Assembly (NCBI GenBank): GCA_001179505.1
Contig: CDMY01000386.1
Span: 1 to 64,000 of the forward strand
Direction: 5' to 3'
Source: Vitrella brassicaformis CCMP3155
Lineage: Eukaryota; Protista; Chromerida
DNA: 64,000 nt
Each line of letters opens with the position of its first letter. Position 1 is the stretch's first letter. A model generated the notes under the pieces. It saw only the letters and a program-made list of their open reading frames with translations, did no database searches and was not told the origin of the DNA. The translations under genes and the position numbers were made by a program. Shown piece by piece: positions 11,860 to 51,687 of this stretch.

Positions 11860-14800
11860 GCGTGTGCGCGAGCTGGTCTCGTCAGAAGTGGTCGGGCAGG
11901 CGAGGCCAACAAATGCGACGTATGCCCTCTACTTGCGCATGGAAGAGGGGCGGGCGCATGGCTGGCTGGCTGCATGGCTGCATGGCTGACTGACTGATCG
12001 GGCGCTGTTGTAAGTAAATACTGCGCTCTGTTTTGCCTGCCGAGGGGCTGCCTACTTCTCTACTTGTCTGTCTGTACATCCTTCTCGTCCTTTCGGTCGA
12101 CTGAGTCCTACCTATCGCACAGCCAGTGGTGGCCGTTCACGCTGTGTCTGCTTGTCGAGCGCGATCTTGCAGGGGCATTTCACCTCCAGAGCGAGATGCT
12201 CCAAAAGGATCGTGGGCGGGCTGCAGACACGGAGTGAGGGGTGACGCCATCCATCCGTCACGGCTTGGTCTCGTCATATCGCACCGCACCCTTTCTCCCC
12301 TGTCTGTCTGTCTGTCTGTGTGTTTTGCGCATACATACATACATACAAAGCTACATGACATGTATGTATACGTGAGTAGGGCGTGTACCCGCCCGCCCGT
12401 TCGTTTGAGTGACTGAGTGACTGGCTGCCTGCCTCCCTCGCTGCCTCCCTCCCTGGCTTCCTTGTCTCTGTCTACATTTCTTGCCTAGTCTAGGTGACGG
12501 AACTGACCGACCGACCGACCGACCGACCGACATGCATCCGATAGCGTAATTCATTCGTTCTTCGTTGGTTCTGTCCGCCACCGGCTATCTACCCGCCCAG
12601 CCTTCCTTTCCTGTGTATGTGTTTGTGTACGTGTGTGCGTGCCTTTGTGTATTGGTTCGTTCATGTCCATCCCTCCCTGCCTGCCTGCCGCCTGCCTGCC
12701 TGCGTGCGTGTGGTGCATATTTATCCGGCCGGCAACCAACAATCCAAATGGACATCGGGTTCATCTGCCCGAGTGAGTGGAGTGGGTGGCTGGAGAAATG
12801 GTGGGTGGGGCGAGCAAATGGGCGAGGGGGAAGGTTGGGTGTGGCGGGGTGGGTGTCGCTTGGTCGTTTTGACGTCGAGCTGTAGCAGCTATGACCTAAG
12901 TGCCTATGGTATCGATTCTATCGATTGCGTTGTATGTATCGCTTTCGGTGTTTTCTCTCTCTCTCTGTCCGCCTTTCTTTCTACGCGTACACGTGTACAC
13001 GTGTATGCGTCTATACGTTTTATCCCTTAACGTATTGTTGTGTGTGAGTCCGGTCCGTCCTTGAGTCAGGTAAGCAGATCGACCGATGCCCCACCCCACC
13101 CCACCTACCTGTCTGTCTGTCTTGCTTTCCTTCCCTCCCCGTCCTTGGCGGTTTTGTGGTGTCACTTACGAAGGTAGGAAAGGTGTCTTGTCAACCTAGG
13201 TAGGTTTATCTCTCTCTGGAGGCCTCGGTGGCTGGGTGGGTTGGTGAATGCATGGGTGGAGGAGAGGAACACCTGCGTACTAAAGGTGAAAGGCAGGCGA
13301 TTTGAGTTGGGAGTGAGAGTGTTTAGTGCGTGCGAACGGCGTCACATGTGTGTGTCCATGACTGACTGACTGACTAGGTAGGCCGATCGTGGGTTATTAA
13401 GAAAGGAGTAAGTAAGCCACAAAAGGTCATGCTGAAATGGCGTTTCCTAACGTCGCGTGTGCGTACATTCATCCACTCACTCAGTCACCGGTGCGTGTGT
13501 TTGATGGTGGCCAACTCTCTCTCTCTCTCTCTCTCCCTCTCCCTCCCGTCTATATCTCTGTCTCTCTTCCGTCCGGATGCGTGCGTGGCGTGTTGGTGCG
13601 TCTTTTTCACTCATGCTCTCTGCCAATGCGTCCATCCATCCATTTGCTGCCCTCTCTGTCTGTCTGTCTGTCTGTCTGGTCGTCTAACCGCCTGGCTGGC
13701 TGCTACATTTGCTCCCACACACGTGTCTGTGCATCTGGACGCTTGGCTGCCTGCATGCCTGTGAGAAATGAAAGAAGTCCGTGGCTGGCTGACTGGCTGG
13801 TCGGCTGCGTGCATGTGCATGACTCGACCGAAGACACCCCACCCCACGTCATGTCATGTCATGCCACGCCGTTTTCCTGTCGGCAGTAAGTGAGTGAGTG
13901 TCCTTGTCCTCCCTCTCTCCTTGTCTCCTCGCCCCCCTTTTTTCCACACGAGGCGACCTGCCTGCCGACAGACGGACGGACCGACCTCCAGCCGACGTAG
14001 CTATGACACTTACGACATACGTCATTCGCCTGTTTGTGTGTATGTATGTATATGTGCCATGTGTGTGGCCGGCCATGCCGTGTGTGTGGTGCGTGGCCGG
14101 CACGGCACAGCAAACCACGGCGGACCTGACTAGCTATTTAACCAGCGAAACAGAGAGAGAGAGAGAGAGACGGAGGGTGGAAAAGATGAGTGGGTGAATG
14201 CGTGATTGCATTGGGGGGGGTGGGTACGTTTGTGAGAAGTAGGTCTGTTTGTTGCACGCACGTGTGTGTGTGTTATGTGTGAAACCGGCATGCATGACTG
14301 GATGGCATGGAATACAGGTACCCAGGTGTCATGTCATGTCATGTCATGAATGGAATGCAGGCAGGTACAAAGGTATCCATACGTACGTATACGTATATAG
14401 GTCTTTCTTCATATACATATCTGTATGTGTATGTGTGTGTGTATGTGTGTACAATCGGCTGGCTCTTCCGACAGACGCACGTCAGAAAGGTCGTCAGCCC
14501 AGCCATGGCCACCGCCCGGCCCACATTTGTTTATGTATCTATCCATCTGCCTGTGATGGAAGAAAAGACAGACAGACAGGTCAAAGCAAGCGTGTCATTG
14601 ATCATGATGTACGGTCGCTCGATTGAGTACTCTAGGTATTGGTATACACGTACGTACGGCGAATGTGCCGCCCTCGCTCATGCATCCATCGATCCATCCA
14701 TCCATCGAACAACAGGTCTCTGGCTAGCCTCAATCCATTACATATCTACTAAGGTCACCTACTTGCCTACTCACTCGTCTAGTTGCTGCAAGCCAAGCCC

Positions 14801-37896: not shown

Positions 37897-38196
37897 NNNN
37901 NNNNNNNNNNNNNNNNNNNNNNNNNNNNNNNNNNNNNNNNNNNNNNNNNNNNNNNNNNNNNNNNNNNNNNNNNNNNNNNNNNNNNNNNNNNNNNNNNNNN
38001 NNNNNNNNNNNNNNNNNNNNNNNNNNNNNNNNNNNNNNNNNNNNNNNNNNNNNNNNNNNNNNNNNNNNNNNNNNNNNNNNNNNNNNNNNNNNNNNNNNNN
38101 NNNNNNNNNNNNNNNNNNNNNNNNNNNNNNNNNNNNNNNNNNNNNNNNNNNNNNNNNNNNNNNNNNNNNNNNNNNNNNNNNNNNNNNNNNNNNNNN
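37897..38196. other. Assembly gap (300 N) between divergent genes
   Basis: Run of N. Confidence 1.
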
Positions 38197-38325
38197 GGGG
38201 GGGAACTTCTCCAGCTGCGAGCTTAGAGAGGAAGGCGATCGGTCTTCCCGAATTTCGAATTCGCATGGTGGCTGTAGTGTCGTGTTGCCAGGTCTATACG
38301 GTCACCAGGAAGGTGAGTGAGTATT

Positions 38326-39595
38326 ATGACCGATCCTTCCTCTCTTGCTGTGGACTACTTCCTCGTCCTCGACTTTGAGGCCACGTGCGAAGAGAAGCGC
38401 CGACTGGTGCCTCAGGAGATCATCGAATGGCCGGTGGGGAACAAACAGGCAGCACCGCAGCACCGAGAGGGGGCTTGACGTACGTATGTGGGTTGACCTG
38501 TGGCCTTCAGGTTGTGAAGGTGAATGCACACACGTGCTGCATCGAGGACCCTGCTTTTCATCAGTACATAGCGCCTCAGGCGCATCCCACGGTGACTCCG
38601 TTCTGCACACAACTCACCGGCATCACACAGGTGAGGGACAGGAGGGATGGACGGCACGGCGCCGCCTGACTGCAGGCCCAAGCCCATGGCCATCGAGTGA
38701 GTGCATGGAAACGATGAACGACAGACATAGATCCAGACACATACACAGGCTGTCTGCCTTTTGCAGCCCATGTGTTCTGTTCGTATAGGAAATGGTGGCT
38801 GGGCAGCCGCCCTTCGCTGAGGCACTGCAACGGTTCACGGCGTGGATGATACAAAACCGTGAGCATATAGAACACGAGACCAGCGGCTCGACGACAGGAG
38901 GCACGTGTTTTGCTTCAGGCTTGGCAGCTCCAGCCGTGCCTCAGGACAGCAGTGAGGAGGAAGAGATCACCCCCACCGTCCCCCCTCTTCGCTCGGTGTT
39001 CGTCACGTGTGGTGTAGGTTCAATGCATGACACATCCTGTCCATCAAACACCCCCACACACGTGTATATCACCTGCACCTTTTTGACGCCCCCCCTTCGC
39101 TCGTTGCGTAGGACTGGGATCTCAAGACCATGCTGCCCGCTCAGTGTGCGGTGTCGGGGGTGGAGGTGCCGCTGGCGATGAGGACGTGGATCAACATCAA
39201 GAAGGTGTGCAGACTAAATGGGTTGCTAGGGGCAGCGAAACGGCTGTCATGTGCTGTTGCTGATCTGTGCAGGTAGCTTCCCACTGTTTCAGTCGCAGAA
39301 TCGACGGCATGCCCGCCTTGCTGCAGCGCTGCGGGCTGTCGCTTGAGGGCAGGCACCACAGCGGCATCGACGACGCTATCAACATTGCGAGGTGCTGGGT
39401 GCACCTGATCAAGTACAGAGGGGGAGGATGGCAGGATGCTCACATGCAGCCACTATCTGTAACGTTCGTTGCTGTGTTTGGACCAGGACCTACCCCGAAT
39501 TGAGGACAGCTGAGGGCATCGCCCCCTGGCTCACTCGCAACACTGCAATGGTAGCACCCCCTGGAGCAGAGGGAAGTCAAGGGAAGATAGCTTGA
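38326..39595 (+). CDS. ERI1-family DEDDh 3'-5' exoribonuclease
   Basis: MTDPSSLAVDYFLVLDFEATCEE...QEIIEWP, FHQYIAPQAHPTVTPFCTQLTGITQ, FVTCGDWDLKTML, WINIKK, LEGRHHSGIDDAINIAR. The last exon end is either 39503 or 39595. Confidence 0.9.
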
Positions 39596-40290
39596 TGTGG
39601 CGGGTTGTTTCTGTGTCATGCGGGTCGTAAGCTGTGGATTGTGATGAGCGATGCTGCGTCGACAGGCAATAGAGATCTTCATGCCGCCTGCATGCAGACC
39701 ACATGTTCCCCCAGTGCCAATCGTGTATCCCCAAGGCCAACCCAATGCCATTCTGTTTGAGCGAACGCGGCTGGTGCATGCATGAGGCGTTGAGATGAAT
39801 AGCGGTCAGCAGGACTGGTTGATGTACCATCCAACGCACTCGTGTACGCTACATAAGCAAGTCCACCCGACACACAACCGGCCTAAACCGGCCACGAGTG
39901 GGGCGGTCGTGGACGGGCTGCTTTCCATTGCAAGAGTGAACAGATTCCAGCGTCCGTCGCTTGCTGACCCTCACACAGCCAGTATGCCGTCCGGGATCAT
40001 CGGTGAAGTTGACAAGGCCCCCACCTTTCGCCCCCCGTCTCTCGCGTTTTCGAGAAGTCCTTTTTCCCTCCTTGCTGCCCCGTTTTGGACCGGCTGTATC
40101 CAAGTATATCGGTCTACCGGCTGAAATCGGCTGCAATCGAGGTGAAACACCCGTCGGACTCCTCGCTCTGTCAGGCGGCCTTATTCTCACGTTTCCCTCT
40201 CGAGCCAACCGGCGAATCATCGCGTTTCGGCGTCAGGAGCATCCTCCATCGGCGGTTGGACCCGTCGGCAATGGCAACTCACCGTCTCAC

Positions 40291-42271
40291 ATGAGGCAAG
40301 TGCAGAATCAGTCTGCTGATATGCTGCCGCCACCGAAGGCCCAGCCCGGCTTCCCCGGGCCGCTTCCCGCCTCTTCTGTCGATACGACGCTGCATGGGGG
40401 CCAGCAGATGTCCGCCGCGGCGCTTTTCGGTCCGGGACCGGCCGGCAAGGCGGCGCAGGTTAGCGATAAAGTGGAAGAGATGGTGGAGGAAGAGGTGCCT
40501 GGCGAATCGGACGAGACGACTGCGGGGAGCGAGGAGGGAGGTGAGCCAGCCCGTTAAGGCAGCAATATTGACATGGTGGATGAGAAGTTGGTGTGGCGGG
40601 GCTTGGGTGTGTGTGTGGTGTCGTTTTGCAATGCAGGTTATGCTGTGTTTGTTGATTCCAAGGATAAGTACCTGGCCGACTCGCCGCACTTCTTTCAGAA
40701 GAAGTTCGCGGACGGCAAGAACTACTGGGGCGTTGTCGCGTGGAAGGTCAGACTCCTCAGAAAGAGAGCACACCAAAAGTTGGAGAGAGAAGAAGGCAAT
40801 TTTTCCTTTTGGTGGGCTGTGTATACGTTGTGTGCAGGAGCCGCGTTCGTGGAAGGGGAAGGAGCAGTTGATGTACCAGGTCATCTATGCCGATGGCGAT
40901 GCAGAGCACATGGACAAGAGCGAACTCAAGTATGCAAATGCAATGCACACAATACAGCCGTCGCACCAAATGCATCTTCGTCCATTCTTCCCGTAGGCGT
41001 TGTTCGGAGGGCCGCTCCCGCTCGGGTGCCCGTCGCCGCGCCCCGTCCATGCCGCCCTCCCTGGCCAGCGTGTTCAAGGAGATCCGCGAGGCGGCCATCC
41101 AACTCAAGAAGGATGGCATCACAGGTGCGTCACAATACATGCACTCCTCCGATCGCCATTCCGTCTGTTTGTTGTCTGCTGTATGCATGTGCTCAGAGGA
41201 GGATCTCCTGCCGCTGAGGGAAGCCACGGCCGAGATCGAGATGAAGCGCAGACGCACACAGGCGTTCATGCCTGCCAGGCAGCACACCACCCGCAGCGCC
41301 GCCCGGCAGGGAGGGAGCCGCAAGAGGGGGCCCTCCGGCACACCCAAGAAGCAGCCCCGGACCAACAACACAGCCAAGCGGCAGAAACCCCCGCCCATTC
41401 CATCCGATCGCCGCGCACAGAACCGCCGCAGGGCAACCGATGCGGCCTCTGTGCCTCCCCGGTCAGACAGGGGGCGGGCGAGGGCGGCTGGTCGGAGGCG
41501 GCAGTGGGAGAAGGAGCTGCCGATGTCGTGTGACGATGTGTGTGTCGACGCGTGTGTGGATGGCGGCGGGGGGCAGGGGGACGGCGGCCTGAGCGTTGAG
41601 GTGGGCGTGTGTGGTGGTCGCGATGATACGTGTGGCAATGGGGGTGACTCCGAGAAGGACGGCCCTGGGGTGGTGGCTGTCGATCTGGAGGACCATTCTC
41701 AGGATCAGACGCCCGCCAGCAAAGCCGATGTGCTCGTAGCGAAGGGTGCACCCGTGCTGCAGGTGGGGTGGATACACATGGAATATACACACGGACAGAG
41801 AGACACCCACCACAGCTATTTGTGCATGTGGTTGGTGCAGGCCGGTGCGGGTTTGTCGATGCGGGCGGTGAATGCGTTTGTGGAGTACCACGGCGGCCAC
41901 CCCTTCAGCCAGTCCTTCTGGACGGTCGACGCGCTCATCGGCATGGCACAGCGGAGCGACCACCACAGGGTGAGCTCGTGGGGGTGACCACATACACACC
42001 ATGGACGCATCCATCCATCCATCCGTCCATGTGTGCGTGTGTGTGTGTACGTCTGTGTGCACTGCAGACACGTGAGATGATCGCTCAGCCCTGGTGCCCA
42101 CCGGAGAGGCGCGACTGGATTGTGTCCCGCCTGTTTGAGGTGCTGCTCGAGCACGACCGCATGATAAACACCCCCACCCACACCAACGACGCAGACACCG
42201 ACCACACATCCCCATGTAAAAAGAGGGATCCCAAAGCGGAGCCCTACATCGAGATGGAAGTCGACACGTGA
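40291..42271 (+). CDS. Hypothetical protein with a Tudor-like (PTM/DIR17-type) module and basic low-complexity region
   Basis: Spliced exons give FQKKFADGKNYWGVVAWK|EPRSWKGKEQLMYQVIYADGDAEHMDKSELK, resembling the 'KF..G.V....Y.V.YEDGD.E' Tudor-like pattern. The start codon is uncertain. Confidence 0.55.
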
Positions 42272-42779
42272 TTAGTTCACCAAGTACATATACATCGACG
42301 CGTCGCGTGCATGGACGGCTGCTTAATGGGACTGACGCAGGGCGGGAGTGGGGGTGAGGGAGGGGTGGGCATGCTTTGCTTTGCTTTTCGTGCCGCGCCA
42401 CAACGTACGTCACATTGATGGCCACAGGACACATGACTGACTACTTTGCCAACGTTCACTGATTGATGGATATAACACTGAATTGTCTCTCTCATGGCAT
42501 ACATCAACCCACGGGAGACGCCAAACCCAGAAACCGACTCACTGTCACACACACACCCCGTGGGTCATACACGCACACTCACACACGCCCTGCAGCCGCT
42601 GGAGTACCAACTTGACTTGAAACGAAAAACGCAGGGTAAGGATTTCTCTGTGCTTTTCTTGTTATGCTCGAGTCGCAGCTTGACCAGGAGACATGAAGGT
42701 CTCCCCAGGTCAAGAACCACACCACCTAGCAGACATACAGTACACTGACTGCACTTGATAGATCTGCTGTGTGCATGAC

Positions 42780-42867
42780 ACAGGGGCAGAAGGTTCGCTG
42801 TCCATCGGGCTGGGCCGCTTCCGGTAAGGGATTGCACAGCCAGCAGCCGTCACTCGCGGCCCCCTGT
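42780..42867 (-). promoter_or_regulatory. SECIS element (distal copy), form II, GUGA type
   Basis: Minus strand: GTGAC GGCTG ct GGCTGT gc AA TCC cttacc GGA a GCGGCC CAGCC CGAT, closed by helix I (ACAGGGG/CCCCTGT). Core UGAC at 42852-42849, AA at 42833-42832, CGAU at 42807-42804. Confidence 0.8.
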
Positions 42868-43181
42868 CGCCCGGTCACACACATCAGCCAAGATCGCATG
42901 ATCGTGCTTGTGGGGCTAGTGGTCCAATCAGCACATGTACGAAGCGAGTGACCGGTTGACGAAAAAGAAAAGGAGGAGAAGGGCAGCAAGGAACACCCCC
43001 CCACACCCACATATATGGAAGAGGAGCATACAAACCACGTACATGCCCTCACACCCACATGCAGACCAGCCAAGAGGGGAAGCAACGATATATACGGTGC
43101 AGATGCCTACGTATACGCGACAAATCCATCCACCTCCATCCACACACACGCAATGGACGGATGGGCTGTGTGGTGTGAGAG

Positions 43182-43268
43182 AGACAGGCAGCTCGCTATC
43201 ACTTCAGGCTGGGCCGCTCCCGCCAAGGGATTGCGCAGCCGTCAGCCGTCACTCGCGGCCCCCTGTCT
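43182..43268 (-). promoter_or_regulatory. SECIS element (proximal copy), form II, GUGA type
   Basis: Minus strand: GTGAC GGCTG ac GGCTGC gc AA TCCC ttggc GGGA GCGGCC CAGCC TGAA, with helix I AGACAGG/CCTGTCT. It lies ~230 nt after the stop codon of the UGA-containing gene. Confidence 0.85.
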
Positions 43269-43499
43269 ACGCTCACACGCACATATGGCAGCAGACATCA
43301 CATAGCATGTTGTCTATGTGAGTGAGTGGATGGGGTGTTGGGAGGTCGAGGTCAGATACAGAGATGCAGCAACGACGCAGCGAATGTATACCTTCCCACT
43401 GGCCTAAACTCATTCATTAGAAACGTACAAAAGCACACATGGCCCACCGTGTGCGGCCAGCAGCAGCTATGGCCTGTCTATATGAGTCGGTCTGCCTGT

Positions 43500-45344
43500 C
43501 TATGCGGTGATGACATTGTTCCGTAGGAAGGCATTGATATCCATCGACTCGTACAGAACGCCGCCGTCGGGCAGACCCAAAGCAGGCACCTGACTCACAC
43601 ACACACACACACGCACGCACCGGCGTTGCACATGTGAGTGTAACAGCACAGCACCTCCCACCTGTGTGAGTCCGCCCCTCTGTTTGAGTTGGTCCTTCTG
43701 CGACGGGTCGGCCTTGACGTCCACCAGCGGCAGCATCCCCTGCAGCCCCAAAGCACTCAGCTGGTCCAGCACATGGACGCAGAAGGGACACTGGGGCATG
43801 TAGAAGAGGCAGTAGCCCTCCTTCGACAGATCCTGCACACACGCAGCCAGCCAACCAACACACACACACAGACACACACACACAATCATCTCTTTCACTG
43901 TGTCGGTTCTGTGTGTGTCATCCCACTGCCCACCGTGGCGTTGACGTGCTTCATGTTTTCGACAAGCGGTGCGGGCGGCGCGTCCTTGCGAGAGGCCTTG
44001 ACCTCGCTGATGTAGTCGCGGCCCGTCTGCTTGCCCATCCACTGCAGCACGGCGTCAAACGAGTAGTCGAATGGACCAGGCCCACCTGCACCAACGACGT
44101 ACACACCGCACACACACCCATTCCCCCTTCATAAGTGTGTTTGTTTCCTCGATCTCTGGCCGACCGATGAATGCCAAAGTGCCATCGGGTTTGAGGACCA
44201 TGAGGCGGTCGAGCCAGGCGGCGTAGGCCACGCAGGCCTCGTCGTCCGAGCCGTCGATGAGCAGCTCGCCAGTGACGCCCTTGCCGGCGAAGAAGTCCAC
44301 CGCCAGCTTGGTCCGCTCGGCGAGGCTCGTGGTCTTCTTGACCCTCAGATTCCCATACACCGCCCACTCATCAGTCGGGTGGGCCTCCTGTGGCCACACA
44401 CACAGACATGGAGAGATGGCCGCAGCCGTCACCCACAACCTCTGCTGGTGTGTGGTGTGTGGTGTTGGTTACCCTCATGTAGATGGTGACGAACTTGGCG
44501 TCGTCCTTGAACAGCTGTTGGGCGACCATCAGGTCGTCCATAACAGCCGCAAACTGACATGCCAATCAATCAAGACACACACACAGGGGGAGAGAGGCAT
44601 GGATGGAGCCACTCTCAAGCAAACCGAGGAGGCGGATCGATCTCCTCTCTCTCGTGGCACTTACCGGGGGTCAGCTGCAGCTGCCGAAGTTGAGCACCAG
44701 GAACTTGGTGGCGTCGAGGAAGTCGTAGATGTGACGCTTCTCACCCTCAGTCGTGTACACCACACAATTGGGCGCCTTGCGGCCCTCTCTCAGGGTCCAG
44801 CGGCCACGCCTCCACACACAACACACCCAAACAGTGTCCGTCTCTCTCCCTCTCTCTCTCTCTCTCTCTGTGCCCACCTGTGAAGGCGCACATAGATCCA
44901 GATGCGGTGGTAGAAGGCGGGATTGGTCAGAGTGTGCCACATGGTCTCGCTGAGGTCATGTCGCAGCGGGTTGGGCTTCTCGGCGCCCAGCTCTCCGACG
45001 CCTTGTCGGTTGGTCATCGGGCCGGGCAGCCCGGTGACCTTGACGCCCAGCGCTCGCGAAGTGGGAGCATCCGGCTTTGTCGAAGCAGGAGCCTCCTTCC
45101 AGCCGAGCAGTCCCTTGATGAAACCCATAACGCACTTGAGAATGTAGCCCTGACAGCAGACAGACAAGGCACACACACCAACAAGCATGCATCTCATCCT
45201 CCCAATGGATGCTGCTGATCAGCTCAGAGACGTCGCCGACGGACTGACCTGTGTCAAGAAGCCGACCATAAAGGCAAACCTGATGACGTCCAATGGCAGG
45301 TACGCCACCTCCCACAGCTGCTCTGACACCGACGACGCCCTCAT
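43500..45344 (-). CDS. DIO: Iodothyronine deiodinase-like selenoprotein fused to a C-terminal glutaredoxin domain (409 aa, Sec at residue 169)
   Basis: Exons 45344-45249, 45149-44878, 44809-44665, 44553-44473, 44387-44165, 44085-43934, 43832-43662, 43589-43500 (1230 nt, all GT-AG, phase-consistent). Hydrophobic N-terminus; EGRKAPNCVV; KFLVLNFGSCS-U-PPF; TIYMREAHPTDEW; AYAAWLDRL; FIGGPGPFDY; then LFYMPQCPFCVHV...QVPAL...LYESMDI. Confidence 0.92.
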
Positions 45345-45567
45345 TTTGTGTGAAGGAAGATCAGCACAGCAGTCGACGGCCTTCATTCATGCAGACCGCC
45401 GACCACCAGATCCAGGCGCTTGCCGACGCCTCTCCGATCCCGCTGGCTACCGAAAGAATGGATGAATTGAAAGTCCTCCTTCTCTTGGAGCTAAGCTCGC
45501 AAGCGCCCAAGTTCGCAGCCCGCTCTGCACACAACTCATTGATTTTCGACGGAAAGGCCAGCTCGCG

Positions 45568-46763
45568 ATGATAGCGGCGATTGACGTGCTGTCAGCTCAC
45601 ACGCTGCGGATCGGTGCCATTCTCGAACTGACCGGCGTGATCTTCCTCCACTCGCTGTTTCTCACGGGATGCACCTCGCCTCTCTTCGATGTGTATGCGG
45701 CGTCCATGACGGGCCAGCCAGTCGATGACTACGAGGAGAAAATGAAGGCCGCCATTGCAGCGGTTCGCCATTGGAGCCTGCCTTCCCTCTATGGGCAGGT
45801 GCCGTGGATGACGGGCGCCCTGTTCATTCTCGGCTTCCAGGTGAGCATTCCACTGCAAACAGAGCGGAGGTGAGCTGTGTGTGTGTGTGTGTGTGTGCGT
45901 GTCGCGTCAACAGGTGAAGCTCACTGCAGACCCCTGGCTGTCCTCTCGGCATCGTCTGTTTCGGCTGGGAATCGGAGTGCTGCAGATCGGTGCCTTCCTG
46001 GACGTCACCTGGAACCTCGTCAACCTGGCAGAGTGGTGAGCTTGCAGACGAGCAGAGCCCCTCGATCGAGGGTGGCACGTGTCCTGTGTTCGTGTGTCTG
46101 TGTGTGTGTGCAGGGTGATTGCCGTCAACTATGTGAAGGCCTCCGATGCAACCATTACTGCACTCATAGAGGGAGGGTTCTTCTGGTGGCCCGAGATGCT
46201 CTATGTGTCCTTCCTCTCGCTGGCGGTGCTGGTGAGTAAGGGAGAGGGGGAGAGGGGGGGACGGACAGCTCATGGTGCAGTGCAGTGCACACCACAGCGC
46301 TGTTTGTCTGGTGTGTGCGTATGTTGTTGTGCGTGTAGCTGTATGGCGTGTCGTTCATGCTGCTGGATGTGCACCATCCGGAGGGCGGCAGCACCTGCCT
46401 GGCCTGGACCCTCCTCGTCTCGTGGACACTCACAGGCACCACCGGTACACACACACACCACACAAGACGCATGGTCGATTGTGCCTGTCTGTCTGTCTGC
46501 CTGACATCCACGGGATGTGTGTCCATTCAGCCTTTCTCCGTCTGCTGGTGCCGCCCTCCCTGGCGGCGCTGAGCGTTGTCGTGGCCATCGACACAGCCTG
46601 GCCTCTCTTTCTCATTTTATCTCTCGTCCTCACTGTCGTCTGGTCTTTCCTATTCGAGCCGGCCGTCAACAGAGGTATATACGCTGAGGCTGGTGGTGCT
46701 GATGACTATGGGCCAGAGCATACCCCCCCAAGGCACTGCTGGGCCGCCATACGCCGCATATGA
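45568..46763 (+). CDS. Multi-pass membrane protein of unknown family (about 5 exons), head-to-head with the deiodinase gene
   Basis: Several hydrophobic segments across spliced exons (IGAILELTGVIFLHSLFL, VPWMTGALFILGFQ, MLYVSFLSLAVL, AWPLFLILSLVLTVVWSFLF); stop at 46763. Confidence 0.7.
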
Positions 46764-47331
46764 CATTGGCCCGGCGTATAAGTGAAGGAGGAGAGCAGCG
46801 GGACAGAGGATAGGGGGTGTGTCGTAGCGCCAAAGGACTTACTTGACGTGTGGGTGTCCATTTAGCCATGTGGCTGTGTGTGTTTGTGTGTGTGTGCGCC
46901 GATCGGATAAGTTGTGTCGACAAGTTGGATGCGATCGCGATGAGGGCAGGTTTCGGCGCGTGAATTCAGTTGTGTTGGTGTGCTGGTGTTTTATCTGTGC
47001 GGCGGGTCAATATCTGCTTAGTTACAGAGAGTCTCGTCTTTCAGAAGACAAGACCCATCGCCATTGACTCGACCATCACTACATGGCCAATTGTCGTGTG
47101 TCCGCAAGTGTGCTGTCCTTTGCACGTACACACAAGAAGGGAAGAAACTCACATCCAATGGAATGACCCACCTCGATCGAGGCAGCCAGAGCAGCAACCC
47201 GTCCCTGACTACTACATGTCGCACACGACATATTACAGCCCCTGCTAGCGACTCACTCACACAGGGCATACAATGACATCCGCGGCGAAATGACCAGATA
47301 AAAAACTCTTACAGACCAGACACACACACCC

Positions 47332-48380
47332 TCAGTCAGCTGGGTAGTCCAACAGTGAGCTGACAGGATCCTCCCCACCACCGTATCGCAGCAGGAACTG
47401 CTTCAGCCAAGCCATGGTGACGGGAAAACGCTCGTCGAGAGTCCGGCCAGCAGCCACAGGCACCTCAGTGGTTTCCACCTGCAGAACTCTGCCGCCGTTG
47501 ACGTAAACTTCGCCGTCGACGAAGTTGACTACTAGCAAGACAGGTCCACCGAGCCCCTCGAGCAGGAAGACCATCCCCCTGCGGGGATCTGCTTTCGACC
47601 GATATTTGGCCGAAGTCAAACCGTACCTCGAACGTAGCGAGTATGTCCGCCTTGGTCAGCCACATTGCGCTTCGCCGCCTACCTCCTGCTCATTGTTTTA
47701 AGCTCCTCGTCGCTGAATGGGGGCTTGGTGAGGCACACCTCGCCGCTGCCGTAGTGGAGCACCCCCTGCCGGAGTACCTGCGGTGCTTGGACGTTGGGCG
47801 TCGACCCGTGAGTCGACCTGTGAGAGGAGAGAGGAGAGAGGGGCAGTGGCTGAGCTTAGTGAGGGCGCCACGCATACCAGTGGTTGATGAAAGACTGCTC
47901 AGCCATGACTGACACGACAGCCCTCAGCTGACATGAAACGTGCGTGACAATGACGAGAGCACACCCGCACAGCGGAAAAGACGGATGGTGTAATGGCCAT
48001 GGATGTCATCTCGCTATTGACTGCAGCTGCTGCACGGTCTACACACATGTGTCAACACAAAGGCATGTATACAGGCAGACAGATGAGGCAACACACATGA
48101 TTCACGTACCTTCTCGTATGTCTTCTTCTGCCCCTTGCACCATCCCCTGGGGCAGCTCCTGCCGAAGCTCATGGAGCCAGCCCACCAGACACCCCTCGCA
48201 GTACTCATGCCCACACTTGGTGCATCGGCTCTGACAGATGGGGCAGTCGCTGTCGCCCTCTCCCTCCCCCTCACCATCCCCGCCGCTCTCTGCTGCCTTG
48301 CCCTCTCGCCGCAGCAGTGCGCCCGGCAGCACATCACTGATCGGGCAATGGCACCTCTTTCTGTGGCAATGGCCTGATGT
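47332..48380 (-). CDS. Possible RING-like zinc-finger hypothetical protein (may be degenerate)
   Basis: CPICQSRCTKCGHEYCEGCLVGW near 48230-48170; downstream exon-like segments end ...SSLLDYPAD*. Exon phases were not fully reconciled. Confidence 0.35.
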
Positions 48381-48513
48381 GATGTGAAGGAAAGGGAAAA
48401 CAAAGTAACAGTGCTCTGTGTGATGGGCTAGAAGTGTGCAGTGTCACTTACTTTTGAGTGTCTCTGTCGAAGTCTTTGGCGCCTAGAGGGATGAGCTCAG
48501 TTCTCCAAGGTTT

Positions 48514-48564
48514 CGTCTGACAGACGTCAACGGGTTCTGCCCACCCGTTGACGTCTGTCAGACG
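48514..48564. repeat. Perfect 22-bp inverted repeat with 7-nt loop
   Basis: CGTCTGACAGACGTCAACGGGT-TCTGCCC-ACCCGTTGACGTCTGTCAGACG. Confidence 0.95.
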
Positions 48565-48627
48565 GTGCAGGAGAAACAGAATGGCGCCGACATCGCGAGT
48601 GATTGTGACAGGCATCTATACGGCACC

Positions 48628-48663
<36 letters not shown>

Positions 48664-49307
48664 TGGAGAGAGAGAGCGGCTCCTGTTGTATGCCGTGTGT
48701 GCCGCTGTATCTGTGAGTATGTCATTTCGCCTGCCTGTCATTCGACCAGCGCACCCGTACCGTTCCTTCACAATGTGAACATCTGCATCGCCGTAGTTGC
48801 AGCAGCCTGCACACAGCCACGTGCGAGGAGATGAATCCTACACACTCACATGAGGGTCTGGATGCGTGTGGCTTGTGGCCTCTTACGTCGTAGTATGCAC
48901 AGTGACTGGATGTGCGCCGGGGATGTTGCCCATGTCATGGCGTTTGCCTTGGCGCCAGCAGCCACAAAGAGGCTGTGGTCCATCCTGTTGCCGTTCTTCC
49001 CCTCGTATCGGCGGTCAGTGCCTCCTTGTCCTTGGTGAGGGCCTCCTTCTGCAGCTCAACGTGTTGACGCTGCCGTCGGGCATAATTACGAGCGCCAGCA
49101 AATGCCGGAAAGATGGCTCACAAACGATGCTGCAGCGGTGAGAGGGGAAGGGAGGGCAGATGAGATGCGAGAGAAGGCAGCGAAAGAAAAACCCTAAAAA
49201 AGACGGGGGCAGAGTCTTGGGGCGCGAATTCTCGACCGGCCAAAGTGTGACCTTTCCCCGTTCCACATTCTCCCGCACCGAATTCGGTGGTAACAGCTGT
49301 CGGCATT

Positions 49308-51687
49308 ATGGATGTGCATCAGGTGAGCCAGCAGCCGTGAGCAACGATCTGATGATTCTCCTCGTTGCTTCGCTACTCTGTGTGTGTGTGCAGGTCAGGG
49401 AGGATACGCGAGCAGTTGAACAGGGCCTGCGGCACCTGCAGGAGCTCAACACAGCGGTGCGCCTGCCTGCCTGCACAGAACAAGTCGTCGACTCTCTCTC
49501 TGCGTATGTGTCTTCCCTGCAGCTCGGCGCGTTGCGGTCTCACTTTGAGCAAGCGCAGCCTCCCAGTCTCACTGCACAGGTACGTCACACACACTGCCGC
49601 ATCGCTCGTGGAGTTTCCGTCTTTCGCAGGCGCCGTCGGCCAGCTCATTGGAGCTCCATGTGCAGCATGCCCTCGTCAGCTCCCACATCGCCACAGCACA
49701 GTCGCAGCTCACCCGCACACATGAGGACGTGTCGCGGGTGGTGGATGCACTCAAACCGATCCTGGCGGCCGCACCCAATCCCGCCACTCAGGATGATGCC
49801 GAGGTGCGCACAGCAGATGGCGACAGCACGACACTCTCTCTGTGTGTTAATCGCTGGTTCTTGTTGCTCTGTGTTTTGCAGGCCTCTGCAGTGAAGCGCC
49901 CGTCATTTCGTCTGACCCATCGAAGCGGCAACCCTCCACCTGTGAATGTGAATCAAGGACCGGTCAGACCGACACCATGACAGATCTGATACATCGAATC
50001 CTCTTGACCTTACTCTGATGTCATGTTGATTGTCACATCAGGCCCGTCGTCGGCTGTCGCGTGATGAGCTCTCCAACGTGTTCGGCCACCTGCAGCACTG
50101 GGAGCTGACGCGCCACCGCCGGCGTCTCGGCACGCCCCTCTTCCATCAGTCGGCCGCCAACTACACCCACCTGGTCATCGACTGTGAGGACGACACGGCG
50201 CGGCGCATGTGGGAGACCATGCCGCTGGCCGTGGCCCAGAGATGGGGGCAGAGGGCGACCAACGTCCGAGTGATCAAACACCGCTACCCCAAGTGGCATG
50301 ATCTATGGTGCCGCGGGACCTGGGCGGCATTAGTGGAAGGTCATGCGAGGGGCCGGGCGGCCATCGCAGACAAGAAACGACGAGAGAGGGAGGGAGGGGA
50401 GGGGGCAGCTGCTGCGGTGGCGCAAGACGATTACGGCCCCAGATCAGCTGCTCGCGTTGTGGAACGCGTGGTCGACTGGACGCGTCATCAGTCGGCTGAC
50501 GAGGGCACACTAGAGGTGCTGTCATTCGAGGCCGTCGAGCTCGATGACAGCATTGACATCCCCCACCCGCTCCCCTCATCTGATCTGCCGCCCGCCCCCT
50601 GCGTCCCGATCCCCATCCACCTGCCGGCACTCAAGACAGCCAACAGCATCCCGGGATACCTTGTGATGGCTCCTCAACGTCGCAACTGGCATATGCCCGC
50701 TCTCAGGGTCCTCACCATCGGAGAGCTGCCGGGAGGCGATGCCGGGTCGGTATGGCTGACGCACTGTAAAGCGATTGAGGTGCTGGACTTCAACGCCACT
50801 GGCTCTTATTCTGGTGCGTTTGTGGCCGACCTGCCGAGTGCGCTGCCGGCCGGATGCGGAGCACTCGAGGCGCTCCACACTCTGCGAGGCATCGCACTGC
50901 CGGCCTCCCCCGCCGACATCGACAAGCTGCGTGAGGTGATGGTGGCGAGGGGCGCCAGGCGGTCCATTCGCAACCTTCAGTTCATCTGGAACCATTGTGT
51001 GGTTGACACTGACAACACTGTGCAGCAGCTGAGGAAAATCGCGGAACTCAGGTGGGTCGGGACGGACCAGGCAGGCAGACAGACAGGACCGTGTATGTAT
51101 GTACTTCATGTGACTGTGGTCGTCTGTTTGTGCTGTTTCGTCAGGGACGCAGTGGCTGATCCCGCTGCCATGTCGGAGCCACTTGTTTGCGGCAACATGG
51201 GGTATGGGGGTCTCGCCATGGAGCTCCTCTCGCGCAGCAGCGACCACGTGTTCCAGAACGTCATCGCCGTGTTCGCCAAGACCATCACGACCGTGACCTA
51301 CTGCGGGCGTACCGAGGCCACCCCTGCATCGATCACGGACGACACCTTCCCCGCCGCCCACACCCTGCAGCTGCAAGACGATGCCCTCCCCAGTGAGGCC
51401 AAGAAGAAGAGGGCGGTCGAGATCGCCTCCCACATGGCCAACCTGCAGCGCATCGAGGCAGACGCCCATGTGGCTGTCAGTGAGGTGTGGCGTTTCGTTG
51501 CACGGCTGCAGCGGGCGCGGATTGGCAGAGGGCGAGAGGGCGGCCTGACGGTGCATTTGATGGTGAATTTTTACACACTGCTCGGCCACGTGCCTGCTTG
51601 CTTCTGTCTGGGGGGGCGGTCCGTCGAACAGCTGCGGGGCGTTGAGAAGATTGAAATCGATATCTGGGGTGAGGGATCTTCAACAGG

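What the first reader, a model, noticed from the sequence alone, without database searches (positions are those of the whole stretch)
43500..45344. Deiodinase-glutaredoxin fusion selenoprotein in an alveolate-like genome
The in-frame TGA (44673-44671) sits exactly at the Sec position of the deiodinase motif (LVLNFGSCS-U-PPF; vertebrate DIO: PLVLNFGSCTUPxF). The downstream YxxEAH..DxW, AY.A..(D/E)RL and G.GP..Y motifs are intact, and SECIS elements follow. After a short linker comes a full glutaredoxin domain (CPFC, QVP, LYES). Deiodinases have a thioredoxin/peroxiredoxin-like fold and need a thiol reductant, so this looks like a self-recycling enzyme analogous to Prx-Grx hybrids. It implies reductive dehalogenation of halo-aromatics, or a peroxidase-like role, in a unicellular organism without thyroid hormone. 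Standard gene callers would truncate it at UGA, as the ORF track does. I know of no described DIO-Grx fusion, but did not search.
Basis: partly seen in the sequence, partly recalled or inferred. Interest (0 to 1): 0.95.

Follow-up and report, generated by a model that had tools for sequence, protein, structure and literature searches.

The report
Deiodinase–glutaredoxin fusion selenoprotein gene, Vitrella
A gene of the alga Vitrella brassicaformis encodes a selenocysteine-containing relative of thyroid-hormone deiodinases fused to its own glutaredoxin-like domain; public annotation hides the selenocysteine, and the fusion hints that glutathione/glutaredoxin is this enzyme family's natural recycling partner.

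Summary
An 8-exon minus-strand gene (45344-43500, all introns GT-AG) encodes a 409-aa protein. It has an N-terminal hydrophobic anchor, a deiodinase (DIO) domain with UGA at codon 169 in FGSCS-U-PPF, a roughly 40-aa linker, and a C-terminal CPFC glutaredoxin/GST-N-like domain.

The organism is Vitrella brassicaformis CCMP3155. The gene is public as CEM08771.1, but that model uses an earlier donor and deletes the 11 residues VLNFGSCSUPP, so the selenocysteine is hidden.

Assembled transcripts confirm all seven introns. They keep the TGA and join the DIO and Grx exons on one mRNA. Those spanning exons 1-7 come from a second gene copy about 96% identical.

A third paralog of about 39% identity, most likely also Vitrella, has the same architecture and a TGA at the same site. 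Bacterial homologues carry Cys there.

Two hand-built SECIS-like hairpins with a GUGA core lie in the 3'UTR. Rfam does not detect them.

No DIO-Grx fusion turned up outside Vitrella in the protein and metagenome searches, and no paper describing one was found.

Self-recycling by glutathione through the fused domain is plausible, because human DIO1 is regenerated by glutathione via its proximal Cys. It remains untested, and the substrate is unknown. The scan also noted DIO-Grx fusions on other pieces of this genome.

The parts
45345..45469 (-). 5'UTR; the transcript contigs start at about 45469
   Evidence: blastn of transcripts L004/L006/L007 on the window
45249..45344 (-). Exon 1: ATG and the start of the N-terminal hydrophobic segment
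   Evidence: Kyte-Doolittle 19-aa maximum 1.6
44878..45149 (-). Exon 2: rest of the anchor and the N-terminal module
44665..44809 (-). Exon 3: DIO beta1/active-site strand ...LVLNFGSCS-U-PP. The public model CEM08771.1 uses a donor at 44697 and so drops 44697-44665.
44671..44673 (-). In-frame TGA, Sec169. The proximal Cys167 lies two residues upstream.
   Evidence: No base difference at these positions in the spliced RNA contig. TGA in all three coding sequences.
44473..44553 (-). Exon 4: F...IYMR, including Tyr196
44165..44387 (-). Exon 5: EAHPTDEW, the loop-D region, and AYAAWLDRL
43934..44085 (-). Exon 6: GGPGPFDY, the end of the DIO domain, and the linker
43662..43832 (-). Exon 7: first part of the Grx/GST-N-like domain, with CPFC at 43790-43779 (residues 338-341)
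43500..43589 (-). Exon 8: VP of QVP (Gln380 closes exon 7), LYES, and the TAG stop (43502-43500)
   Evidence: L007 is 100% identical here
43190..43272 (-). Proximal SECIS-like hairpin (type II). The 5' core is A-GUGA-C at 43252-43249 and the 3' core UGAA has its GA at 43205-43204. Helix II has 5+6 bp, followed by an unpaired AA and a mini-stem.
   Evidence: Rfam negative.
42791..42873 (-). Distal SECIS-like hairpin, a diverged copy of the proximal one. The core GUGA is at 42853-42850 and the 3' side reads CGAU.
   Evidence: RNA contigs with no differences cover 42442-43260.
42442..43499 (-). Probable 3'UTR. It is covered by exact-match RNA contigs except 43261-43402, where the contigs break at the repeated SECIS sequence.

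Best explanation
This is a real, expressed selenoprotein gene of Vitrella brassicaformis.

Shown:
- The mature mRNA keeps an in-frame UGA at codon 169, in the deiodinase active-site motif FGSCS-U-PPF.
- The same mRNA continues in frame through the rest of the deiodinase fold, a linker of about 40 residues, and a C-terminal CPFC glutaredoxin/GST-N-like domain.

Inferred:
- SECIS-like hairpins with a GUGA core in the 3'UTR recode the UGA as selenocysteine.
- The protein sits in a membrane by its N-terminal hydrophobic segment, with both domains in the cytosol.
- Sec169 is oxidised by its substrate. By analogy with deiodinases it abstracts a halonium ion from a halogenated aromatic, giving a selenenyl halide or selenenic acid.
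- The proximal Cys167 traps this as a selenenyl-sulfide.
- The fused CPFC domain reduces the selenenyl-sulfide and is itself regenerated by glutathione.

On this reading the enzyme carries its own reductant module, as peroxiredoxin-glutaredoxin hybrids do. The substrate is unknown.
For: Gene model:
- Eight exons, all GT-AG, consistent phases, one open frame apart from the TGA.

RNA:
- A spliced 1184-nt contig in run X8 joins exons 1-7, including the TGA exon and the CPFC exon.
- MMETSP and Logan transcripts L004-L007 map to exactly the eight exons.
- Each transcript carries a 168-aa ORF ending ...GSCS and a 234-aa ORF running to the Grx end.

Domains:
- T4_deiodinase scores 65.7 bits, Glutaredoxin 30.6, GST_N_2 32.5 and GST_N_3 29.1, all above their cut-offs.
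- The post-Sec piece matches mouse Dio3 (4TR3) and Dio2 (9H48) at E about 1e-9.

Sec signature:
- TGA at the aligned codon in the window copy, copy 2 and a 39%-identical paralog.
- Cys at that position in bacterial homologues, GSCTCPPF.
- dN/dS is 0.36-0.38 downstream of the UGA.

SECIS:
- The UGAN/KGAW core consensus (PMC3753652) is met by the proximal element and by the paralog's element.
- An ad hoc scanner finds 3 hits in the window against a mean of 0.175 per shuffled window.

Mechanism:
- In human DIO1 the proximal Cys of C-x-U forms a selenenyl-sulfide with Sec that glutathione reduces. A GSH/GRX1/GR system supports turnover and the thioredoxin system does not (PMC9141512). C167-x-U169 is conserved here.
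- Five of the six Dio proton-relay residues listed in PMC11592359 are present: Ser166, Ser168 (Thr in Dio), Tyr196, Glu199 and His201.
- The nearest clusters by language-model features are bacterial AhpC/TSA-Grx fusions.
Against: - No Rfam SECIS model matches either hairpin, even at E<=10 on 151 bases.
- In the Vitrella elements the unpaired AA lies 16 nt after the core, longer than the 12 nt in the paralog's element. The distal element and copy 2's element have C at the K position of KGAW.
- Sec machinery (tRNA-Sec, eEFSec, SBP2 and others) was not checked.
- The second relay histidine (Dio2 His182) is Thr217 here, and the Dio3 Arg275 clamp residue is Pro.
- No protein-level data exist.
- The transcripts that span exons 1-7 belong to the 96%-identical copy 2. 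For the window copy, only exon 8 and the 3'UTR are shown at 100% identity.
- Nothing tests that the Grx-like domain reduces the Sec site.
- No Grx-like ORF lies beside the 80 bacterial DIO-like genes examined.
Confidence: 0.6

Rival explanations
1. The gene and fusion are as described, but the enzyme is a thiol/selenol peroxidase rather than a dehalogenase. Sec169 would reduce hydroperoxides, and the fused Grx-like domain would recycle it with glutathione. That would make it a true functional analogue of peroxiredoxin-glutaredoxin hybrids.
For: - The deiodinase fold is peroxiredoxin-like (PMC9141512, PMC11592359).
- The nearest clusters by features are bacterial AhpC/TSA-Grx/GST_N_3 fusions.
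- The organism has no known thyroid hormones.
- Thr replaces the second relay histidine and Pro replaces the Dio3 Arg275 substrate clamp (alignment).
Against: - Pfam assigns T4_deiodinase, not AhpC-TSA or Redoxin.
- The Dio-specific loop-D region and the Ser/Ser/Tyr/Glu/His relay residues are kept.
- The 39% paralog keeps the second histidine.
Confidence: 0.25
2. The C-terminal domain is not the reductant of the Sec site. It would act on its own as a glutathione-dependent GST-like catalytic or substrate-binding module, or as a redox or regulatory module, for example in deglutathionylation or GSH-dependent dehalogenation chemistry.
For: - The best solved-structure matches of the domain are omega-type GST N-terminal domains, LigG 4G10 and TDR1 4AGS.
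- GST_N_2 and GST_N_3 score as high as or higher than Glutaredoxin.
- The top NCBIfam hit for the window-type domain is glutaredoxin 2.
Against: - The protein ends 29 residues after QVP, so no GST C-terminal helical domain is present.
- A CxFC dithiol is conserved in both divergent paralogs, CPFC and CKFC, as in dithiol Grx.
- The DIO1 precedent points to GSH/Grx regeneration (PMC9141512).
Confidence: 0.15
3. The annotated isoform, which uses the donor at 44697 and lacks VLNFGSCSUPP, is the real or main product. On this reading the protein has no Sec and no active-site strand.
For: Both public models, CEM08771.1 and CEM27681.1, are built this way. The alternative donor is an in-frame GT.
Against: - Every transcript contig recovered (X8 record 7, L004-L007) runs to 44665 and contains the TGA.
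- The deleted segment is the most conserved motif of the family and is kept, with its TGA, in the 39% paralog.
Confidence: 0.04
4. The UGA is a genuine stop. Only the 168-aa N-terminal fragment would be made, and the downstream frame would be an untranslated relic.
For: Rfam finds no SECIS. Sec machinery was not verified.
Against: - The downstream frame stays open across five further exons, with correct phases, in three gene copies.
- dN/dS is 0.36-0.38 downstream of the UGA.
- The catalytic motifs and the CxFC are conserved at 39% identity.
- SECIS-like hairpins sit in all three 3'UTRs.
- Bacterial homologues have Cys at the site.
Confidence: 0.03

Closest known systems
Vertebrate iodothyronine deiodinases DIO1-3 (Pfam PF00837; structures of mouse Dio3 4TR3 and Dio2 9H48)
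   Same: - A thioredoxin/peroxiredoxin-like catalytic domain.
- Sec in FGS-C-(T/S)-U-PxF, with the proximal Cys two residues upstream.
- The EAHPxDxW, AYxAxxxRL and GGxGPxxY motifs.
- An N-terminal hydrophobic anchor.
- A UGA plus a 3'UTR SECIS.
   Different: - It carries a C-terminal CPFC Grx/GST-N-like domain that no described deiodinase has.
- Thr replaces the second relay histidine, and Pro replaces the Dio3 Arg275 / Dio2 Lys241 residue.
- No distal Cys sits at the Dio3 Cys239 / Dio2 Cys205 position.
- The host is a unicellular alga with no known thyroid hormone.
- The SECIS core is GUGA rather than AUGA.
Deiodinase-like selenoproteins of protists and bacteria (Dictyostelium homologue, PMC2375036; NCBIfam NF038285 'deiodinase family protein')
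   Same: - A stand-alone DIO-family domain with Sec or Cys at the same site, in organisms without thyroid hormone.
- Function unknown.
- The 80 best soil-metagenome relatives all have an in-frame stop directly before PPF.
   Different: None of those recovered here carries a Grx or GST-N domain.
Peroxiredoxin-glutaredoxin hybrid proteins (bacterial AhpC/TSA + Grx/GST_N_3 clusters; the Haemophilus PGdx type is cited from my own knowledge)
   Same: A Prx-like thioredoxin-fold catalytic domain followed by a C-terminal Grx-like domain. These are the nearest Atlas clusters by features. The presumed logic, a fused GSH-linked reductant, is the same.
   Different: The catalytic domain is AhpC/TSA with a peroxidatic Cys, not the T4_deiodinase family, and it has no Sec. 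It is an analogue, not a homologue of the fusion.
Other selenoproteins fused to thiol-redox modules: thioredoxin-glutathione reductase (Grx-TrxR, own knowledge); GST-MSRA fusion selenoprotein of Emiliania huxleyi (PMC7539508)
   Same: A selenoenzyme covalently linked to a glutathione-system domain. These are algal or protist examples of selenoprotein domain fusions.
   Different: The catalytic families differ. PMC7539508 lists SELENOM-pVHL, SELENOM-ShKT and GST-MSRA fusions but no DIO fusion, and it does not cover chromerids.

Membership tests
Iodothyronine deiodinase family (PF00837) | Profile match above the curated threshold | tested here: met
   T4_deiodinase scores 34.9 and 28.6 bits on single exons, 65.7 bits on the post-Sec piece and 31 bits on the pre-Sec piece. 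The cut-off is 27.
Iodothyronine deiodinase family (PF00837) | Sec or Cys in the FGS-x-(T/S)-U/C-PxF active-site motif, with a proximal Cys | tested here: met
   The motif FGSCS-U-PPF has the TGA at 44673-44671. Bacterial homologues read GSCTCPPF.
Iodothyronine deiodinase family (PF00837) | Proton-relay residues Ser, Thr, Tyr, Glu, His, His (Dio2 S127, T129, Y157, E160, H162, H182; PMC11592359) | tested here: inconclusive
   Five of six are present: S166, S168 (for Thr), Y196, E199 and H201. The H182 equivalent is T217. The 39% paralog has His there.
Iodothyronine deiodinase family (PF00837) | Dio-specific insertion (loop-D) between EAHPxDGW and (H)xSLEDR | tested here: met
   It aligns without large gaps to Dio3 and Dio2 over this region.
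Iodothyronine deiodinase family (PF00837) | N-terminal membrane anchor | tested here: inconclusive
   The Kyte-Doolittle 19-aa maximum is 1.6 for the window copy (borderline) and 2.39 for the paralog. No dedicated TM predictor was available.
Iodothyronine deiodinase family (PF00837) | Reductive deiodination or dehalogenation activity | not testable with these tools
   Needs an enzyme assay.
Eukaryotic selenoprotein (UGA recoded as Sec) | In-frame UGA retained in spliced mRNA, with a conserved coding frame downstream | tested here: met
   dN/dS downstream is 0.36-0.38, and the 39% paralog has TGA at the same site.
Eukaryotic selenoprotein (UGA recoded as Sec) | Cys-containing homologues aligned at the UGA | tested here: met
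   P0005 and P0014.
Eukaryotic selenoprotein (UGA recoded as Sec) | SECIS in the 3'UTR: UGAN/KGAW core, helix II, unpaired AA (PMC3753652) | tested here: met
   Found by hand folding and an ad hoc scanner. The proximal element has GUGAC/UGAA. The distal element and copy 2's element have CGAU, with C at the K position. The AA lies 16 nt from the core, which is long.
Eukaryotic selenoprotein (UGA recoded as Sec) | Match to curated SECIS covariance models (Rfam) | tested here: not met
   No SECIS hit at E<=10. In my own understanding the Rfam seeds are mostly AUGA-type metazoan elements.
Eukaryotic selenoprotein (UGA recoded as Sec) | Sec machinery in the genome (tRNA-Sec, eEFSec, SBP2, PSTK, SepSecS, SPS2) | not tested
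   There is no tRNA in this window and the whole genome is not searchable here. Other scan notes report further candidate selenoproteins in this genome, unchecked.
Glutaredoxin (PF00462) | Profile above threshold, a CxxC active site, and the cis-Pro (T/Q)VP motif | tested here: met
   Glutaredoxin scores 28.7-30.6 bits against a cut-off of 22.9. CPFC is at residues 338-341 and QVP at 380-382. The paralog has CKFC and QVP.
Glutathione S-transferase (full two-domain GST) | GST C-terminal alpha-helical domain after the N-terminal thioredoxin-fold domain | tested here: not met
   The protein ends 29 residues after QVP. Only GST_N_2 and GST_N_3 match, with no GST_C. It is a GST-N/Grx2-like domain, not a GST.
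Peroxiredoxin-glutaredoxin hybrid | AhpC/TSA or Redoxin catalytic domain | tested here: not met
   Pfam gives T4_deiodinase only for the catalytic part. The resemblance is in architecture, not membership.

The most novel reading that the evidence does not exclude
Vitrella carries a small family of self-contained, glutathione-driven selenoenzymes. In each, a deiodinase-type Sec site is recycled intramolecularly, or across a dimer, by a fused dithiol Grx domain. They would reductively dehalogenate iodinated or brominated aromatic metabolites. If so, the fusion is natural 'Rosetta-stone' evidence that GSH/Grx is the ancestral physiological reductant of the deiodinase family, and it offers a simple model for the still unresolved regeneration half-reaction of deiodinases.
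Probability: 0.3. Interest if true: 0.8.

Novelty: new variant of a known kind. Interest (0 to 1): 0.6.

Why it matters
The physiological thiol reductant of deiodinases, and the mechanism of their re-reduction, are still debated (PMC9141512). A natural fusion of a Sec-deiodinase domain to a dithiol Grx-like domain is genetic evidence for a GSH/Grx partnership. The fusion is kept in two paralog lineages only 39% identical.

It also offers a compact system, as a U-to-C recombinant protein, for studying the regeneration half-reaction. It adds a selenoprotein fusion type that I found in no paper searched. And it exposes a systematic annotation artefact: the UGA is spliced around, deleting the active site. 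This probably hides other selenoproteins of chromerids, whose selenoproteome was described in none of the searched papers.

Tried and rejected
- **Rfam.** Four cmscan runs, on the gene region, on the paralog transcripts, and on 151 and 161 bases around single candidate elements, gave no SECIS hit.
- **RNAalifold.** A run on four SECIS candidates misaligned the paralog's element and gave no usable covariation. I relied on single folds and a home-made scanner instead.
- **The "second species" reading.** I first took P0004 (L001-L003) for a second species. I rejected this because the same samples (JGI 3300017148, ERR558152) also hold the Vitrella copy-2 transcripts. It is most likely a Vitrella paralog, so cross-species conservation is not shown.
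- **Protein searches.** A word-index search with P0030 found only its own cluster. A profile search (A2) found the fusion only in Vitrella proteins. An exhaustive phmmer with exon 5 gave 27 hits, and only P0001 and P0004 were fusions.
- **P0002.** This 2925-aa protein with 26 matching stretches is a spurious repeat match.
- **Metagenome scan.** The 80 best loci are all DIO-only. The long match of L031 was a low-complexity tail.
- **Gene neighbourhood.** No Grx-like ORF lies within 1.5 kb of the bacterial DIO-like genes. Neighbour clustering was dominated by spurious high-GC frames.
- **Literature.** No paper holds both 'Vitrella' and 'selenoprotein'. The algal selenoproteome survey lists other fusions but no DIO-Grx fusion. 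Schweizer 2014 (PMC4115520) is not held.
- **Structure prediction.** Not run. The only full-length record (P0030) lacks the active-site strand, so a model would mislead.
Full report
**What is in the sequence**

Reading the minus strand of 43000-46000 and joining GT-AG-bounded exons gives an eight-exon gene. The exons are 45344-45249, 45149-44878, 44809-44665, 44553-44473, 44387-44165, 44085-43934, 43832-43662 and 43589-43500. The introns are 68-111 nt, and most contain (GT)n/(CA)n runs.

The 1230-nt coding sequence has one internal stop, TGA at 44673-44671 (codon 169), and ends with TAG at 43502-43500. The product has 409 residues:
- a hydrophobic N-terminus (residues about 13-47; Kyte-Doolittle maximum 1.6);
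- a deiodinase-type domain with the motifs FGSCS-U-PPF, IYMREAHPTDEW, AYAAWLDRL and GGPGPFDY;
- a linker of about 40 residues;
- an 85-residue C-terminal domain with CPFC (338-341), QVP (380-382) and LYES.

**Is it more than chance?**

Single exons already pass Pfam's curated thresholds. T4_deiodinase scores 34.9 bits for the 45 residues before the TGA and 28.6 bits for exon 5. Glutaredoxin scores 28.7 bits for exon 7.

On the longer transcript-derived pieces, T4_deiodinase reaches 65.7 bits. The C-terminal domain matches GST_N_2 (32.5), Glutaredoxin (30.6) and GST_N_3 (29.1). The post-Sec piece matches mouse Dio3 (4TR3) and Dio2 (9H48) at E about 1e-9 over the whole C-terminal half of their catalytic domains.

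**Organism and public records**

An exhaustive phmmer search with exon 5, followed by a cluster look-up, identifies the genome as Vitrella brassicaformis CCMP3155, a chromerid alveolate.

The window's gene is public as CEM08771.1 / A0A0G4F8U6, 398 aa, named 'GST N-terminal domain-containing protein'. A second copy, CEM27681.1, is 96% identical. Both models are identical to my translation except that they lack the 11 residues VLNFGSCSUPP. The predictor used an in-frame GT donor at 44697 to jump over the UGA.

So the fusion architecture is already visible in databases. The selenocysteine and the active-site strand are annotated away.

**RNA evidence**

Laying public run contigs on 42400-45700 shows one 1184-nt contig in run X8 at depth about 200. 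It is spliced exactly at my junctions and joins exon 1 through exon 7. It therefore carries the TGA exon and the CPFC exon on one molecule, and it shows no base difference at 44671-44673.

MMETSP and Logan transcript contigs L004-L007 map to all eight exons, confirming all seven introns. ORF callers split each transcript into a 168-aa product ending ...VLNFGSCS and a 234-aa product running through the Grx-like domain to ...VITA. That is the expected picture for an mRNA with an in-frame UGA.

These full-length contigs belong to copy 2 (97-99% identical in the exons). For the window copy itself, exon 8 plus 3'UTR (43592-43403, from L007) and 42442-43260 (runs X1, X7 and X8) are covered at 100% identity.

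No recovered contig uses the annotated 44697 donor.

**Selenoprotein signature**

A third transcript family (P0004; L001-L003) encodes a protein only about 39% identical. It has the same layout: a hydrophobic N-terminus...YVLNFGSCS-TGA-GPF..., EAHPTDGW, AAWPDRL, GGHGPFGY, a linker, then CKFC...QVPAL...ILYDS. The TGA is at the aligned codon in all three coding sequences.

These transcripts come from the same samples as the Vitrella copy-2 transcripts. I therefore read P0004 as a divergent Vitrella paralog, not a second species. Scan notes s1-235820 and s1-197151 report DIO-Grx fusions on other pieces of this genome. I did not check which loci those notes refer to.

Further support:
- Bacterial homologues have Cys at the UGA position, GSCTCPPF.
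- The 80 best metagenome relatives have an in-frame stop directly before PPF.
- Between the two recent copies, dN/dS is 0.34 overall and 0.36-0.38 downstream of the UGA.

Together these indicate that the frame beyond the UGA is translated and under constraint.

**SECIS**

Two similar hairpins lie about 250 and 650 nt after the stop codon. Each has these parts:
- the 5' core A-GUGA-C;
- a helix II of 5+6 bp with a 2-nt bulge;
- an unpaired GCAA;
- a mini-stem;
- a 3' core, UGAA in the proximal element and CGAU in the distal one.

Copy 2 has one such element. The 39% paralog has an element with the same AGUGAC core, 12 nt to an unpaired AAA, a mini-stem and a UGAU 3' core, inside a long helix I.

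The proximal element and the paralog's element fit the UGAN/KGAW core consensus quoted in PMC3753652.

A simple scanner written for this purpose finds three hits in the 64-kb window. Two are these elements, and the third is at 14294-14348 on the plus strand. Dinucleotide shuffles give a mean of 0.175 hits per window.

Against this, Rfam reports no SECIS match even on 151 bases at E<=10. In addition, the AA lies 16 nt from the core in the Vitrella elements. I rate the SECIS assignment as probable, not proven.

Unchecked scan notes mention GUGA-core SECIS elements at other candidate selenoprotein genes of this genome. Sec machinery could not be examined. The window holds no tRNA.

**The C-terminal domain**

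This domain lies between classical glutaredoxins and GST N-terminal / Grx2-type domains. Its best solved-structure matches are the N-terminal domains of LigG-type GST (4G10) and TDR1 (4AGS), followed by Grx1. The top NCBIfam hit for the window-type domain is glutaredoxin 2.

The protein ends 29 residues after QVP. There is therefore no GST helical domain, and 'Grx-like dithiol domain' is the right description. The CxFC dithiol, QVP and the (E/D)S motif are kept in both paralog lineages.

**How it probably works (inference)**

In human DIO1 the proximal Cys of the C-x-U motif forms a selenenyl-sulfide with Sec. That bond is the substrate of glutathione. A GSH/GRX1/GR system supports turnover, whereas the thioredoxin system does not (PMC9141512).

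Here C167-S-U169 is conserved. No Cys occupies the 'distal' position of Dio3 and Dio2. A dithiol Grx-like domain is tethered by a flexible linker.

The simplest model has three steps. Sec169 is oxidised by its substrate. Cys167 traps it as a Se-S bond. The fused CPFC domain reduces that bond at the expense of glutathione.

Five of the six Dio proton-relay residues (PMC11592359) are present. The second histidine is Thr217 here but His in the paralog. The Dio3 Arg275 clamp is Pro here and His in the paralog. The substrate is therefore unlikely to be bound as thyroxine is.

A peroxidase role is the main rival. The nearest protein clusters by language-model features are bacterial AhpC/TSA-Grx fusions.

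**Distribution and novelty**

The fusion was found only in Vitrella across these searches:
- the exhaustive 50%-representative search;
- a word-index search with the full-length model;
- a profile search with the post-Sec pieces;
- the Atlas;
- the 80 best metagenome loci.

No Grx-like ORF neighbours the bacterial DIO-like genes.

Deiodinase homologues in protists have been known since the Dictyostelium selenoproteome (PMC2375036). Selenoprotein fusions are known in algae (PMC7539508). No DIO-Grx fusion and no chromerid selenoproteome appear in the library searched.

I class it as a new variant of a known kind, a deiodinase-family selenoprotein with a built-in glutathione-system module. Interest is moderate to high, because it bears on the unresolved question of the deiodinase reductant. 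It is limited by occurrence in one organism and by the absence of any biochemical test.

Noticed in passing
window 44665-44697 (minus): The public gene models CEM08771.1 and CEM27681.1 avoid the UGA by using an in-frame alternative GT donor, which deletes the 11 active-site residues. The same artefact may hide other Vitrella selenoproteins.
   Followed up: yes
window 14294-14348 (+): My ad hoc SECIS scanner gave a third hit here: an AUGA core, a 12-bp helix II, and AA 13 nt from the core. It overlaps a (CATGT)n repeat and may be chance. No upstream gene was examined.
   Followed up: no
L001-L003 (transcripts from JGI 3300017148, ERR558152, SRR646408): A divergent paralog of about 39% identity has the same DIO(Sec)-Grx layout, a CKFC motif and a more canonical GUGA-type SECIS at L001 ~1558-1610. 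Its genomic locus was not identified.
   Followed up: partly
L008-L087 (soil and other metagenome contigs): All 80 best bacterial deiodinase-like loci have an in-frame stop directly before PPF. L031, for example, reads LIFGSYT-stop-PPF. Sec-type deiodinase-like genes therefore look widespread in these bacteria. None is fused to or neighboured by a Grx-like ORF.
   Followed up: partly
window 42791-42873 vs 43190-43272 (minus): The window copy has two SECIS-like elements about 400 nt apart, a local duplication, for a single UGA. The transcript of the 96% copy shows only one.
   Followed up: partly
window 45514-45900 (minus): Separate RNA contigs in four runs cover an upstream neighbouring gene, ending about 45 nt before the 5' end of the deiodinase-Grx transcript. 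The two genes are tightly spaced.
   Followed up: no
window 38000-38499: GC content drops to 0.34 in this 500-nt bin, against 0.53-0.67 in the other bins profiled (38000-50000). The cause was not examined. It could be an assembly gap or an AT-rich element.
   Followed up: no
P0002 (2925 aa): This is an unrelated repeat protein. A unit of about 73 residues containing APAYAAWVE(R/K)Q mimics the AYAAW motif, producing a spurious E=1e-34 hit from 26 weak stretches.
   Followed up: yes
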